Positions 43,025 to 60,296 are shown, counted from the whole stretch's first letter. The stretch is DNA of 63,577 nt, filler included, from Dimorphilus gyrociliatus (GCA_904063045.1; 4 parts of 4 records of this genome joined end to end with filler, not necessarily neighbours in it); one strand, 5' to 3'. The notes: generated by a model from the sequence alone, not told the origin. Translations and numbers: made by a program.

Positions 43025-44929
43025 ATAAAATATCTTTTTAAAGATATCGTTTATTTTCCCGCTCCCAATCTTTAGCTCTCCATCTTCATTATAACTATTT
43101 TTCCGCATTTTTTCCTCCAAAATCATTTGTTTTGCTGGCTTATAATAATAGGATTTAGATCTGATGGTACGGCTGTAATAGGGATAAACTGGTAAAACAA
43201 TCATAGGAGTAGTAAATTTTTCGGATAAACTTTTAAAAGAATCGGCCCCTTCTTTACTATTTATAAAATGTTGTCTAGGTTGGCTAAATAGAAAATATTT
43301 GTAATATACCATTCTTCTATTTTTCCGTTCTTTTTCTGTATAATTTAAATTAGCAATAAAAATTGAACGCATGTTTCTTTTAATAATATAGTTGTTTGTA
43401 AGTTTTTCGGTGCCATATCTGCCACAAATTGTATCTTGAATGCCTTTTCGAATTTCTTCTATATCAAACTTAGCGTCGATATTGTTCTTATTCTCTTGTT
43501 TTAATACTTTTTTGGAAGTTTCATCTTTAAAATCTGTGCTTGACCTTTTGTAATTTTGATTATCTAACTGGCTTGCCAAATTATCTGTTTTGAGTTTTTT
43601 TGTTGATTTATTATTTGTAGTCGATAGTTCTTCACTGCTAGCAGCTCTTTTAGAGTTACCGCTTTTTGAAACATTAACATCCGAATTTGTAAAGTCTTTT
43701 TTATGATCATATAAAATGTTTTCACCAAATTGTTTAGCAATGCCCAGAAACTCTTGTTTATCGTTTGAATCAACTATACTCTGTGAAATTTTTGTATTAT
43801 CGACTGGACTTTGCTGATACTTATTTGGGAAGGTTGGTGAGCAAAATGGTTGGTTAGCAACCTCACAACTACTATGTAATAAACTACTATTCTGGCCATA
43901 TTGAACCAATGAACAGTCATGTATAGAATAATTTGCAGACTCCATTTGAGATGCAATTTCATGTGTTTGAGGATAATGAATCGTTGTATTGCTAGTAACT
44001 TTGGTGGGATATTCATAACTTTGACTACTTTGAGTTGTAAATAAATAAGAATTCTCTGAATACGTGGTGTTATAATTCATTAATTGTGGATTTTGTGGTG
44101 TATTTTGGTGAACTTGACTATTATAGTCAGCTACAGTTGAGTATTCATTACTACTGGTTGATGCAGGAGTTGTTTGGTTGTTCGATGTATAATCACCATA
44201 ATTAAAGGATCGTTGATACTGCTGTGAAGGGTTCATTGGTATGTAATTAGGAGTAGAAGTAGTGACATCCGTATAATTTTCTGAGTATGTATTATTGTAA
44301 TATGATGGGATATACTGTGGTTGTAATATCGTATTATTAATAGAACTGTTTGTACAATGCGAAATTGCTGGTTCTTTCGCATTGGTTGTATATAAAGAAT
44401 CATTATTTAAATTATACTGAGCTGTGTTTAAAGTTGATTGTGGAAAAGAATCATAGCATTTCTGGCTGTAAGAACTTCCGAATGTGACTTTACGGTCTAA
44501 ATCTATATTGTTTATGTCTAACTCTGGTGCTCTATCCATATTTGAAACATGAGGAATTTGTAAATCAGGTAAAAACTCGATTCCTATGTGCTGGCCAGTA
44601 CTGTCTAAATCTATATTGTTTGTGTCTAACTCTGGTGTTCTATCCATATTTGAAACATGAGGAATTTGTAAATCAGGGAAAGAAGTGACTTCTAATTGCT
44701 GGGCTGAACTATTATGGCTACTTGGCAAGACCTGAAGCTTTGGAGTAAGTACTGTTTTTCGAGTACAAATAAAGTGTTCTGGATGGATAAAGGCATCTTC
44801 TTCAGTGCTATAAGTTGAATTTTGTTGATCATTTGACTCCTTAGTTGAGTCTTTACTTAAGCTATGCTCAGTACTCTCAATAAACACATTTTCAGCTCCT
44901 ATAATATCATTAATAAAGAAAAGAATCAT
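43025..44929 (-). CDS. Intronless uncharacterised protein (>630 aa): S/T/N/Y/Q-rich low-complexity middle, basic C-terminal domain; 3'-truncated
   Basis: True ATG at 44929 (MILFFINDIIGA; the listed ORF starts at a TTG). Internal duplication PDLQIPHVSNMDR.PELD.NNIDLD. KRAASSEELSTTNNKSTKKLK resembles a bipartite NLS. Confidence 0.75.
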
Positions 44930-45223
44930 TGATGGGCAGTAAACAATGCATTTATACAATTTAATATTTTCTGCAAATGGAAGTTTTAATCCGTCATTAT
45001 TTTGTAAACATCGTTGAAGTGTTAATCAAATAAATTTATTACTAACTCCTTTTAATATTTAGCTTTATTTACTTGAACTGTCAATTAGGTATCAAATAAT
45101 TTTTTAAAAATACTCATAAACAATAAATTTTATTAGTTAAGTTGAGTTTAAATACTCAATAAAACATTACTTATTTGTAAAATTAATTTTTCAATAAACT
45201 TAAAAATTTTTTATCTTTATATT

Positions 45224-46886
45224 TGTTGCATGTAATTTTGCCCCATATAATATGGGTCGGGATCGATATAACTTTTTAAAATAACTCAAATTGAACTTGC
45301 TTGAATTTTAAATTCGTTCTAAATTAGGAAAGGGTCTGGTATTTAATTGTGACCCCTACCTAATTAATATGAAAGAGTTTCTATATATGGATTTTAATCA
45401 GTATGGGAGGGGTGTAAAATAATTTCTTAAAATAATTAATAAATTTTTTAATTTTGGTTTTTTCTACTATTTTTATCCTTCCATGACTATTACATAATAT
45501 TAAAGTATTGTCATTATTAATTTGATGTACATTATAAGTTTCTGTTTCATATAGAGAGTTTTCAATTATAGTACTGCTGTTTAGCCTACTAGGTCTGTAG
45601 TCTTTTAGTAATAAAACTTTATCTCCAATAATTAATTAGCAGAGTGGTTGGTTTCTTGTTCTCTCCTATAACTAACTGCATATGACTGATACCTCTCCCT
45701 AACTATTATTGCGTTATTATTTATGTTAGTAATTGGGTACAACATACTCGGGTTCTTTCCTCTAAATAAAATAAATGGCTTTGTTCTTGTTGTCCGGTGT
45801 GGTGTGTTATTATATCTATAAACTATTTCTTTTAAGTGTTTAGTCCATTGGAAGGTATTCCCTTCACTTCCCCTTATCAACCTATCTTTTAAAATTCTGT
45901 TAAAACGCTACACTTGCCCTTGACCCTGCAGATGATAGGCCTTCCTCTTATATGCTTTACTGTATATTTTTCTAAAACATCTTTGACCCATTTATTCACA
46001 AATTCTATCCATTATCGGTGTGAATACTTTTCCATGGGCCTTCGCTTTGAAATAGTTTTTCAAGTATGTCAGCAAATATACAGCCATGCTTTGAAGCAAC
46101 TGGATACACAAATCCAAATTTAGAAAAAGAATCAATCATTGTATAGCAGTACTTCATCCCGCTATTTATATTAGAAAAGTTCGAAAAATCAATAAGGTCT
46201 ACCATTAGTCTTTCATTAGCAGCAGTAGGTATGATTGCAGCAATTTTTTTTGTTATAACAGGTGGTTTAATTTTTTGACAAAATTCACACTTAGATACAA
46301 AACTTTTGACGTCAAGGTGTTTTATTCCATAATATTTCTCATTTATCAACATAAAAACCTTGTTTATGCCCAAATGATCTGGCTCATGGTATTTTTTAAT
46401 TATTTTTTGTTTCAAAACCAGTTCATAATCACATATTACCAGTTTTTCCATATCATCTTTCCTTATAACGAGCTCACCATTTTTTAGACCTAAGTCTTTG
46501 ATTCTCCTTCTAAAGCTCTTCTTTTGTTCCTTATTAAGGCCTTCTTTGTATACTTTATGCATGAGATATCTAACTATAAAAGTTTTTTCCTCTAATGACT
46601 CTATCTTTATTAAACTACCCATACTTTATTAGAAAAAAAAGGTTAATACATATCTAATTATTTTAAGAAATTATTTTACACCCCTCCCATACTGATTAAA
46701 ATCCATATATAGAAACTCTTTCATATTAATTAGGTAGGGGTCACAATTAAATACCAGACTCTTTCCTAATTTAGAACGAATTTAAAATTCAAGCAAGTTC
46801 AATTTGAGTTATTTTAAAAAGTTATATCGATCCCGACCCATATTATATGGGGCAAAATTACATGGGGGTCACAATTACATACAACA
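45224..46886 (-). mobile_element. Ginger-like DNA transposon (retroviral-type integrase, long TIRs), decayed
   Basis: Near-perfect ~205-bp inverted repeats (45231-45437 and 46658-46862), outer termini TGTTG(C/T)A...TACAACA. ORF 46005-46622 has HHCC (YHEPDH...CEFC), LMVDLID and TDNG; the rest (EFVN..GRP..QGQV*RFN) is frameshifted with the catalytic Glu codon changed to TAG. No gag, RT or RNaseH. Confidence 0.85.
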
Positions 46887-58290: not shown

Positions 58291-59812
58291 AAAGAATATG
58301 AAGAAACGTTTATAATAAGCCTTGATCAAGAGTATCTGTGCGTTCCTCAAATAAATTTTATTAATTAAAATTCTTAAAAGTTTATTTCAGTATCAAATAA
58401 AACCTCTCAGTAATGTAAAATCAATTTAACATTTAGATATATCAGTATAAAACTCAGAAAACATATACGAAAGATTTTCAACAGCATTATGGAGACTATA
58501 ATTTCATGATTATTATCATTTTATACTATTTAAAACAAAAAGCTATAATCAACAGAAACACGAAATAGACGTAGAAAAGCAATTTTCATCATATGAGTAT
58601 TATAAGGTAGAAATTGGTAATACAATAACTTGTTTACCTATACTTGAATTCCAGAATACAACTAAAAGGCATAAACCTATTTTAAATAAAGATGACTTTA
58701 TATAGATAAGAATTATTTCAATAAAGGATAATGTTGTATTAAGCTACGATGGTAACAATTTAGGATTTGTTGTGAGAGAAAAAGGATACTATATAGGCAG
58801 CTAGAGATATATGTTTCTTTATTTAAACAACATACTAAAAACTAGGGATGAGCATGATTATAGTATGCAATTGATTTAAATAGTTATATATGGATTGATT
58901 GCGAAAACACTAAAGATATACCTGAGCGTAACAGGGACTATAACTAGTTTTTACAACTTCCTACGATCCTTTTTTATTGCCTTGAATATTTAATTTACAC
59001 TTTTCCAATCTAAAAGAGCTCTGAATATACTCTGAGAAATCCTCAAGACATAAAATATGAAATGCTTTGTTCTAGATGAATTGTGCTAAGATGTGTATTC
59101 TATAATCATTAAAATTCTAATTCTCTATTTAGCACCTCAATAATAAGAGCTTTTTTAAATTTTGTATTTTAGAAACTTCTCACCTTTTTTCAGCTTTTAA
59201 GGAACTTTTAATTAAAAAATATAGCCAGAATTAAGATCAATACTATCTATGAACAAACAATTATTATTTGGACTAGTAATAGCACGAAGTTGCTTCTCTC
59301 AATGGTTTAGAAGCCAATTAAAAATTTCACTTTTTTATTTTCTCAAAATAGAAGTCTAATTTTTTTAAAGCATTCCAATTCCTTAAAATCTTATGATAAA
59401 AGTCAATATTACAAATAAATTTATCTCCCCTGGAGTCTTTTATATATAATTTGTGGCTGAGTTTTGGAGTAATTCTGTTAAACTGTCATGTTAGTGGCTC
59501 AATCTCTAATTTTAAATAGATAGTCATCAAAGTGTAAAGAAATACATCTCTTATTGTTTATTAAACTTGCTGACAGAGATTTATTACGTCGTGATAGTAT
59601 GAAATTTAATCATGAACCAGTATATAAAAACATTATTTCATAAAGACTTAGAAATTTTCTCGAGAATATTCATCATAAAAAATTATTTGAAGAATATTAT
59701 ACCAATTTAATTAATTATTCTATAATTTGGCTTTGAAACAAAAACGTTAATAAATGTATATCAATTAATAATTATATATTTTTAAAAAAAGAAATGATAT
59801 TAAGCTATTTAT

Positions 59813-60296
59813 TCAGAAATATGTAAATCTTTTAGTTTTCCATAATCTTATATTCCCCATAGGATTGCCTGTAACAAAATCTCCATTTCTTCCTGCAGCA
59901 AAGTGCACCACTCTATCATCTTGGGGACATATTCTGACTCTTTCTAGTTTCTCATCAGTGACTTGGACACAACTATCTGGATATCCGAAGTTGATATTAT
60001 TTTTCATCTTCATAATGAAGATTGCATACTTGAGAGCTATAGTCCTTAGAGAACTCCTTTTTCCCTGTTTTGGAGTCCCACACCTTTATAGTTTTATCCA
60101 GCAGACCTCCTCCAGTATATACGTATTTATCTGAAATTGTAATTGCTCTAACAGAGGAAGGTGCCCTCCCTCAAACAGAACCTCCATTTTTCTTGTGTCA
60201 AATACATGGAACCTGTTTCTTGACCCAACAGCCAATAAGTTGTCGCGCTGGGCCAAACCACAGATTCCTGTATTTCCAATGTCATACTTCAAATAG
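59813..60296 (-). pseudogene. CDC20: CDC20/CDH1 (fizzy)-like WD40 protein, C-terminal part, frameshifted, 5'-truncated by the gap
   Basis: GICGL....LAVG....VFD.R; VRAI.....TGGG..DKTIKVWD..TG; SQVCNL in a shifted frame; RV..FA....FVTG..GNIRLW. The motif order matches the fizzy-family WD40 C-terminus. Confidence 0.6.

What the first reader, a model, noticed from the sequence alone, without database searches (positions are those of the whole stretch)
43025..60296. A foreign, microsporidian-like genome contig inside an animal assembly
Seen: between two artificial spacers lies 17 kb with no evident introns (host genes here have many short ones), seven or more DNA transposons or relics, compact intronless RPC2 and CDC20-like sequences, CCC triplets just upstream of some ATGs, and none that I found of the TAGGCCTA, RTCACGTGAY or AGATGGCGC words that recur in the host contigs. 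Known: large-genome microsporidia are AT-rich, intron-poor, carry Merlin, Tc1/mariner and integrase elements, and show a CCC motif near start codons. Inference: an intracellular parasite or symbiont, possibly undescribed, was co-sequenced with the host.
Basis: partly seen in the sequence, partly recalled or inferred. Interest (0 to 1): 0.8.

Follow-up and report, generated by a model that had tools for sequence, protein, structure and literature searches.

The report
Microsporidian DNA with dead genes
This 17-kb contig is DNA of microsporidian origin, half transposons, and its two recognisable "genes" are broken relics, so it is either a junk-rich piece of a co-sequenced parasite genome or, less likely, parasite DNA lodged in the host chromosome.

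Summary
The contig (28% GC) is real and about 49% transposon. I delimited six DNA elements of six families, five with terminal inverted repeats. The RPC2 sequence is only the C-terminal 500 codons. It is colinear with no intron, cut off at 56784, and carries about 11 frameshifts and 1-3 stops.

An ML tree places it inside canonical Microsporidia (100/99). AU tests reject grouping it with Metazoa (p=0.003) or Fungi (p=6e-6). One public run (organism B) holds a ~95% identical contig. Its indels sit exactly at my frameshift sites, so an intact parent gene probably exists.

Two other runs share some of the window's frameshifts, so the breaks are real and not assembly errors. The WD40 fragment is CDC20/Fizzy-like and also frameshifted. 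The youngest transposon's integrase has one database relative, from the microsporidian Dictyocoela muelleri.

The CCC motif and the missing host words carry no information.

Verdict:
- Microsporidian origin is supported.
- "Co-sequenced living parasite" is the most likely reading (~0.55).
- A host-integrated relic (~0.3) is not excluded.

The parts
43025..44959 (-). Open reading frame of 645 codons (667 stop-free codons), cut off by the contig edge. It is an orphan, low-complexity (S/T/N/Q-rich) protein with a 108-nt x2 tandem repeat at 44491-44706. The first ATG at 44929 is preceded by CCC at -8.
   Evidence: The chance of such an open frame at this composition is 2.6e-22. No Pfam hit, no homologue, no Atlas hit, AF2 pLDDT 38.7.
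45229..46864 (-). Youngest transposon. It has 210-nt terminal inverted repeats that are 100% identical, around a gypsy-type integrase (H2C2 zinc finger plus rve core). The ORF is split into 205 aa and 82 aa.
   Evidence: I1. (PF17921 E 2e-10, PF00665 E 3.3e-8); the single relative is from Dictyocoela muelleri, 39% identity, E 1.7e-35.
47350..50217 (+). Older integrase-bearing element with inverted repeats of about 230 nt (88-93% identical). Its left repeat is split by the nested element at 47425-48547.
   Evidence: I2, I9. (rve E 2.3e-5 for 49308-49529). It is a different family from 45229-46864.
47425..48547 (-). Nested Merlin/IS1595-like element with TIRs of 93-135 nt (94-97% identical) ending in C7/G7 runs. 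The transposase is split into 186 aa and 78 aa.
   Evidence: I4, I6, I14; only a weak PF12762 hit, E 0.066..
51647..52018 (+). Orphan ORF of 123 aa in a very AT-rich stretch (GC 0.19-0.25). A 52-nt direct repeat lies at 51948 and 52070.
   Evidence: D2.
52416..53870 (.). TIR element with 151-nt arms (84% identical), without an intact ORF, probably Tc1/mariner-like. Other copies and TIR-to-TIR deletion forms occur in runs X1 and X2.
   Evidence: I3, I10; 75% nt identity over 129 nt with the next element; joints and many 90-95% identical contigs.
54357..55867 (+). Tc1/mariner-like element with long composite TIRs (77-96% identical) and a broken transposase.
   Evidence: I5, I7, I8, I11. DDE_3 E 3.2e-5, below the curated cut-off.
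55843..56783 (+). Second IS1595/Merlin-like transposase relic. No TIR was found. It abuts the breakpoint of the RPC2 fragment.
   Evidence: PF12762, 45.5 bits, E 1.1e-11; a different family from 47425-48547.
56784..58288 (+). RPC2 (RNA polymerase III second-largest subunit) pseudogene. It covers residues ~617-1120 of ~1126, has no intron, is 5'-truncated, and carries about 10-11 frameshifts (mostly 1-nt deletions, one of 7 nt, one of 16 nt) and 1-3 stops. It is of microsporidian descent.
   Evidence: the X4 contig is ~95% identical, its indels lie at every frameshift site, and it runs on 799 nt upstream of 56784..
58289..59812 (.). AT-rich spacer (GC 0.249) without ORFs of 50 aa or more, lying between the two convergent gene relics.
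   Evidence: No remnant of microsporidian RPC2-neighbour genes.
59813..60296 (-). C-terminal part of a CDC20/Fizzy-type WD40 protein. It lies in three frame pieces (at least 2 frame changes) and runs off the contig edge.
   Evidence: translations. PF24807 E 3.5e-9 for 60000-60170; generic WD40 and FBXW7 matches in the PDB.

Best explanation
The contig is DNA of microsporidian descent. Most likely it is a gene-poor, transposon-rich stretch of the nuclear genome of a large-genome, AT-rich microsporidian that was co-sequenced with the animal and has no close relative in the protein collections searched.

It holds no working core gene. The RPC2 and CDC20-like sequences are decayed duplicate or relic copies. 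The RPC2 copy lost its first ~617 codons at a breakpoint next to a Merlin-like element. It then accumulated about a dozen small deletions and mostly non-synonymous substitutions, as expected under no selection. Transposons of at least six families then inserted around and into one another, the latest very recently.

Shown here:
- the microsporidian placement of RPC2;
- the pseudogene state, and that it is real and not an assembly error;
- the transposon anatomy.

Inferred:
- an intact parent copy exists in run X4;
- the contig sits in the parasite genome and not in the host chromosome.
For: Family and placement of RPC2:
- The fragment scores 115.8 bits against human RPC2 and 109.4 against yeast RPC2, compared with 77 for RPB2 and 55-59 for RPA2.
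- Its best hit among 1.84 billion representatives is Dictyocoela roeselum RPC2. Mitosporidium and Encephalitozoon are also among the top hits.
- The ML tree (LG+C20) puts it inside canonical Microsporidia with 100/99 support.
- AU tests reject grouping with Metazoa (p 0.003) and with Fungi (p 6e-6).

Evidence from public runs:
- Run X4 holds a 2331-nt contig at depth 229, ~95% identical to the window. It differs at 11 of its 12 listed indels by an insertion, each exactly where my protein-guided alignment needs a frame correction. It continues 799 nt upstream of 56784.
- Of 15 listed substitutions against X4, 11 are non-synonymous, spread 4/7/4 over codon positions. Several times the X4 state restores the conserved residue.
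- X10, an RNA run of organism A, gave 0 reads from 11.9 M records even on the multi-copy transposons. This is a weak hint that the sequence is absent from that individual.

Other support:
- The integrase of the youngest transposon (TIRs 100% identical over 210 nt) has one relative in 5.8 billion proteins, from Dictyocoela muelleri.
- GC is 28.4% overall and 36.3% in RPC2. The Dictyocoela muelleri contig gives 29.3/34.9 and the Astathelohania contejeani contig 29.3/35.1.
- Large microsporidian genomes are known to be rich in Merlin, Tc1/mariner and LTR-type elements (PMC4202319) and to hold pseudogenes (PMC10815200).
Against: - Both recognisable core genes are dead. A parasite needs a working RPC2, and none was seen on this contig.
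- Runs X1 (organism A) and X2 (marine sediment) show only pseudogene-like versions in the parts they cover. X2 shares six of the window's indel states and X1 shares three. This would fit a relic in a genome that lacks the parent gene. Coverage is low (depth 3-5), however, and contigs show presence, not absence.
- In X4 the transposon pieces have depth 2-19 against 229 for RPC2. These transposons are therefore not abundant at the depth of the intact gene there. The kind of run is unknown and it may be RNA.
- No rRNA, tRNA or other microsporidian marker lies on the contig.
- No read depth or long-read linkage from the assembly's own data could be examined.
Confidence: 0.55

Rival explanations
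1. Host-integrated relic. A block of microsporidian nuclear DNA (RPC2, a CDC20-like gene and microsporidian transposons) was transferred into the host animal's germ line. It is now decaying there as neutral DNA, with further transposon insertions.
For: - Both core genes are pseudogenes with neutral-looking changes.
- The pseudogene lineage is old enough to exist in at least three diverged versions sharing the 56984 and 57022 deletions: the window, X1 from organism A, and X2 from a marine sediment sample. This is the pattern expected of an inherited locus.
- No intact copy was seen in X1 or X2 where they are covered.
- Transposon pieces in X4 lie at far lower depth than the intact RPC2.
Against: - There is no host sequence anywhere on the 17 kb.
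- The most recent insertion (TIRs 100% identical) is of a family whose only known relative is microsporidian. This fits a genome where microsporidian transposons are still active.
- A 645-codon ORF is still open.
- There were 0 RNA reads in an organism A run, even on the multi-copy transposons.
- From general knowledge, parasite contamination of animal assemblies is common, while large parasite-to-host transfers from microsporidia are at best rare.
- Diverged versions could equally be paralogues or strains of the parasite.
Confidence: 0.3
2. The genes are intact in the organism, and the frameshifts are consensus errors of a low-coverage long-read contig of the parasite.
For: Ten of about 11 frame corrections are single-base deletions, some in short homopolymer runs. 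This resembles long-read consensus error.
Against: - A 667-codon frame is open on the same contig, with chance 2.6e-22. At the indel rate seen in RPC2, about 13 breaks would be expected there.
- Two 210-nt repeat arms are 100% identical.
- Independent short-read-derived contigs of X2 and X1 share six and three of the window's indel states.
- The list also includes a 7-nt and a 16-nt deletion, a TGT/TGC-to-TAA-type stop at 58157, and loss of the first 617 codons.
Confidence: 0.03
3. The sequences are the host animal's own pseudogenes, or those of another non-microsporidian eukaryote, in a transposon-rich region. The microsporidian placement would then be a long-branch artefact.
For: The window RPC2 has a very long terminal branch (1.99), and only 4 clade-diagnostic columns were available, splitting 2:1:1.
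Against: - The AU test rejects Metazoa (p 0.003) and Fungi (p 6e-6).
- The fragment did not join the other long branches available (Babesia, P0015, P0017).
- It matches none of the 7 metazoan-specific columns.
- The best hits are microsporidian.
- The transposon integrase points to Dictyocoela.
Confidence: 0.05

Closest known systems
Large, transposon-rich microsporidian genomes (Dictyocoela muelleri/roeselum, Astathelohania contejeani, Anncaliia algerae, Nosema bombycis)
   Same: - AT-rich composition, with RPC2 about 35% GC and flanks 24-27%.
- Intronless genes.
- Merlin, Tc1/mariner and integrase-bearing elements (PMC4202319).
- RPC2 groups within this phylum.
- The integrase relative comes from D. 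muelleri.
   Different: - The window's RPC2 pseudo-protein is at most ~52-57% identical to any sequence available.
- No close relative was found in the JGI metagenomes.
- The contig carries only dead copies of core genes.
- RPC2 is not next to a WD40/CDC20 gene in the five microsporidian contigs examined.
Nuclear inserts of endosymbiont or parasite DNA in host genomes (for example Wolbachia inserts in arthropods and nematodes; general knowledge)
   Same: Foreign genes present as frameshifted, truncated relics among transposons. Diverged versions that share old lesions occur in different samples.
   Different: No junction with host DNA was seen. The source here would be a eukaryotic parasite, for which I know of no large transfers into hosts. 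A recently active microsporidian-type transposon sits in the block.
Ginger-type DNA transposons (integrase-like transposase with H2C2 finger, flanked by TIRs; from memory)
   Same: The element 45229-46864 has an H2C2 plus rve integrase between 210-nt inverted repeats.
   Different: It is only 1.6 kb with a split ORF. The target-site duplication was not resolved. The nearest protein is annotated as gypsy integrase-like. Membership was not tested.

Membership tests
RPC2 (second-largest subunit of RNA polymerase III) | Rpb2 domains 6 and 7 present, and the sequence closer to RPC2 than to RPB2 or RPA2 | tested here: met
   PF00562 E 7e-28 and PF04560 E 1e-16. PDB scores: RPC2 116/109 bits against RPB2 77 and RPA2 55-59.
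RPC2 (second-largest subunit of RNA polymerase III) | Complete, uninterrupted coding sequence (about 1100 codons) | tested here: not met
   Only residues ~617-1120 are present, and there is no N-terminal part anywhere in the piece. About 10-11 frameshifts and 1-3 stops. The lesions are confirmed in independent runs.
Microsporidia (origin of the sequence) | A marker gene placed within the phylum by phylogeny, with alternatives rejected | tested here: met
   The clade that includes the window has 100/99 support. AU p 0.003 against Metazoa and 6e-6 against Fungi. Caveat: the terminal branch is long.
Microsporidia (origin of the sequence) | CCC/GGG-like signal, or >90% A+T, just upstream of start codons (PMC10815200) | tested here: inconclusive
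   Only one intact cellular-type ORF start is available, and it has CCC at -8..-6. Background is 4-5% of all ATGs.
Microsporidia (origin of the sequence) | Lineage markers in the same genome: SSU rRNA, polar-tube and spore-wall genes | not testable with these tools
   None on the contig (Rfam and tRNA scans empty). The rest of the assembly and its reads were not available.
CDC20/Fizzy (APC/C co-activator) WD40 family | A match to the family-specific propeller profile that is better than to generic WD40 | tested here: inconclusive
   PF24807 E 3.5e-9, against PF00400 at 0.007, for 60000-60170. The score is only 36.8 bits against a 200-bit cut-off because it is a 57-aa fragment. The PDB search ranks FBXW7 and other WD40 proteins first. 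The other two pieces give no family hit.
CDC20/Fizzy (APC/C co-activator) WD40 family | C-terminal Ile-Arg tail (a feature recalled from memory) | tested here: not met
   The last frame piece ends ...KRFTYF then a stop. The copy is decayed and microsporidian orthologues were not examined, so this weighs little.
Merlin / IS1595-like DNA transposons | DDE_Tnp_IS1595 transposase domain, with TIRs and an 8-9 bp target duplication | tested here: inconclusive
   The domain passes the cut-off in 56437-56724 (45.5 bits), but that element has no detected TIR. The element 47425-48547 has clear TIRs but only E 0.066 for the domain. Target duplications were not resolved.
Tc1/mariner DNA transposons | DDE_3-type transposase between TIRs, with a TA target duplication | tested here: inconclusive
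   DDE_3 scores 24.2 bits, below the 28.6 cut-off. TIRs are present. Element ends are too eroded to read the target site.

The most novel reading that the evidence does not exclude
The contig is part of the animal's own chromosome. A block of at least 17 kb of microsporidian nuclear DNA, with parasite transposons, entered the host germ line. It has been inherited long enough to diverge into several versions seen in different samples. That would be a eukaryotic-parasite counterpart of Wolbachia nuclear inserts, and a direct route for microsporidian transposons into animal genomes.
Probability: 0.3. Interest if true: 0.75.

Novelty: new member of a known kind. Interest (0 to 1): 0.42.

Why it matters
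- If it is a parasite contig, the animal assembly contains DNA of a microsporidian that has no close relative in the protein and metagenome collections searched (about 15 billion proteins, plus the JGI metagenomes). The assembly needs decontamination.
- The parasite could be recovered and named from public reads. One run appears to hold its intact RPC2.
- If the contig is instead in the host genome, it would document large-scale DNA transfer from a microsporidian to an animal. It would also give a concrete route for the transposon exchange between microsporidia and metazoans already inferred from phylogenies (PMC4202319).
- Either way, the RPC2 and CDC20-like sequences must not be annotated as genes.

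Tried and rejected
- Assembly error as the cause of the frameshifts was rejected. The reasons are the 667-codon open frame, the identical 210-nt repeats, and indel states shared with independent runs.
- Synteny gave nothing. RPC2 has no WD40/CDC20 neighbour in five microsporidian contigs. tblastn with their neighbouring genes found no further relics in the piece.
- The upstream continuation of the intact gene (a loose end of X4/X2) is not elsewhere in the window.
- The 645-codon ORF stays unexplained: no Pfam hit, no homologue, no Atlas hit, and an unusable AF2 model at pLDDT 38.7, so no fold search was run.
- Rfam and tRNA scans were empty.
- No similarity to plasmids or phages.
- The JGI metagenome scan found only distant RPC2 genes, 46-67% identical. 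tblastx and blastn against the fetched loci found nothing outside RPC2.
- The Atlas search on the WD40 piece returned only generic WD40.
- Clade-diagnostic columns were too few (4) to add to the tree.

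
Full report
**What is there**

The piece 43025-60296 is 17,272 bases at 28.4% GC, with stretches down to 18.5%. Outside it stand only N and linkers. Rfam and tRNA scans find nothing.

Repeat analysis shows a nest of DNA transposons:
- 45229-46864 has 210-nt inverted repeats that are 100% identical, around an integrase with H2C2 and rve domains.
- 47350-50217 is an older integrase element (rve E 2.3e-5).
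- 47425-48547 is a Merlin/IS1595-like element with 94-97% identical repeats. It has split the left repeat of 47350-50217.
- 52416-53870 and 54357-55867 are two Tc1/mariner-like elements (DDE_3 E 3.2e-5).
- 55843-56783 is a second IS1595-like relic (PF12762, 45.5 bits).

The six elements belong to six different families. Together they cover 49% of the piece. All their reading frames are broken.

**The RPC2 sequence**

Two open pieces match Rpb2 domains 6 and 7. They score far better against RPC2 than against RPB2 or RPA2. tblastn with full-length RPC2 proteins shows one colinear match, 56794-58285, to residues ~617-1120 of ~1126. There is no intron, and the first 617 residues are nowhere in the piece.

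I ran my own frameshift-aware alignment against three references. It needs 10-11 frame corrections, nearly all equivalent to 1-nt deletions, and passes 1-3 stops. The contexts are not long homopolymers.

**Are the breaks real?**

Yes, for three reasons:
- The same contig carries a 667-codon stop-free frame. Its chance is 2.6e-22, and it would not survive an indel rate of ~0.7%.
- Two 210-nt repeat arms are 100% identical.
- Contigs from independent public runs share some of the very same lesions. X2 (a marine sediment metagenome, 1184-nt contig, depth 5) has the window's state at 56984, 57022, 57366, 57406, 57616 and 57694, but not at 56800, 56966 or 57826. X1 (organism A, depth ~3) has the window's state at 56966, 56984 and 57022, but not at 56800, 57826, 57940 or 57970.

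**A probable intact parent**

Run X4 (organism B, 60 M letters) holds a 2331-nt contig at depth 229, about 95% identical over 56784-58276. Relative to the window it has insertions of C, C, CAATGTG, A, A, G, C, C, a 16-mer and A, and one 1-nt deletion. Each sits at a place where my protein-guided alignment required a frame correction. The 7-mer and the 16-mer supply the conserved residues that the window lacks.

The X4 contig continues 799 nt upstream of 56784, where the window instead has the Merlin-like relic. X2 runs on with the same upstream letters as X4. X1 also runs on past 56784, with letters unlike the window that were not shown.

Of 15 listed substitutions between the window and X4, 11 are non-synonymous. 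They are spread 4/7/4 over codon positions, and the X4 state often restores the conserved residue. I infer that X4 carries the working gene and the window a decayed derivative. I did not see the whole X4 contig, so its intactness is an inference.

**Whose gene?**

The best hit of the longest open piece, among 1.84 billion representatives, is Dictyocoela roeselum RPC2 (57%). Mitosporidium and Encephalitozoon are also among the top hits. No protein reaches 70% identity.

I built a pseudo-protein with X at each break and compared it with 41 RPC2 sequences of microsporidia, fungi, animals and others. An LG+C20 ML tree places it inside canonical Microsporidia (100/99). Its terminal branch is long (1.99), and its position within the phylum is unresolved, near Dictyocoela and the Nosema/Encephalitozoon group. 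AU tests reject union with Metazoa (p 0.003) and with Fungi (p 6e-6). Composition matches Dictyocoela and Astathelohania contigs.

**The other features**

- The WD40 fragment at 59813-60296 (minus strand) lies in three frame pieces. The middle one hits the CDC20/Fizzy propeller profile at E 3.5e-9, against 0.007 for generic WD40. PDB searches give only general WD40 proteins. 'CDC20-like' is therefore plausible but rests on 57 residues.
- The integrase of the youngest element has a single relative in 5.8 billion clusters, a gypsy-integrase-like protein of Dictyocoela muelleri (39% identity, E 1.7e-35).
- The 645-codon ORF has no relative by any method and did not fold.

- CCC lies upstream of one relevant ATG only. 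4-5% of all ATGs have one.
- The three host words are expected 0.23, 0.06 and 0.01 times from composition.
- Neither point carries weight. The literature cited by memory is sound: transposon-rich microsporidia (PMC4202319) and the CCC/GGG signal (PMC10815200).

**Parasite genome or host insert?**

Everything assignable on the contig is microsporidian, and nothing is demonstrably host.

For a parasite genome:
- contamination is common;
- a very recent insertion is of a microsporidian-type transposon;
- one long ORF is still open;
- an organism A RNA run gave no reads, even on the multi-copy transposons.

For integration:
- two adjacent dead core genes;
- at least three diverged versions of one pseudogene lineage in different samples;
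- no intact copy seen in X1 or X2;
- low depth of the transposon pieces in X4.

Each of the integration points has another explanation: low coverage, paralogues or strains, or X4 being RNA. I put the odds at about 0.55 for a parasite contig, 0.3 for a host-integrated relic, and the rest on minor alternatives. The assembly's own reads would settle it.

**Limits**

- One read-laying run covered only 52400-58399.
- Organisms are coded.

Noticed in passing
window 43025-44959 (-): This is the only intact long ORF on the contig. Its N-terminus after the first ATG is hydrophobic and signal-peptide-like (MILFFINDIIGA). The body is S/T/N/Q-rich with a 36-aa unit repeated twice. It has no relative anywhere. 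It could be a secreted or surface protein of the parasite, but that is a guess.
   Followed up: partly
window 45229-45438 and 46655-46864: Two 210-nt inverted repeats are 100% identical around a 1.2-kb core with a split integrase ORF. This means a very recent insertion or conversion of a non-autonomous element.
   Followed up: partly
window 56784-58288, runs X1, X2, X4: The RPC2 pseudogene exists in at least three diverged versions that share the 56984 and 57022 deletions. Each has private lesions. The truncation at 56784 is private to the window's copy.
   Followed up: partly
window 50297-60296, run X5: A run of only 1 million letters (organism C) holds 6% of the sampled words of this stretch. 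It may be a targeted or very small data set of the same parasite.
   Followed up: no
window 52416-53870, run X1: Contigs in X1 join the two repeat arms of this element directly (joints 52490/53802 and 52603/53673, opposite strands). This suggests MITE-like deletion derivatives of the family in that sample.
   Followed up: no
window 47418-47431 and 48541-48554: The nested Merlin-like element ends in runs of seven C and seven G. The inverted complementarity continues about 20 nt beyond them, so its true ends and target duplication are uncertain.
   Followed up: no
L001 and L002 (microsporidian RPC2 loci): In Astathelohania contejeani and in an unnamed Logan microsporidian, an ABC-transporter gene lies close to RPC2. 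No trace of one lies next to the window's RPC2 relic.
   Followed up: yes
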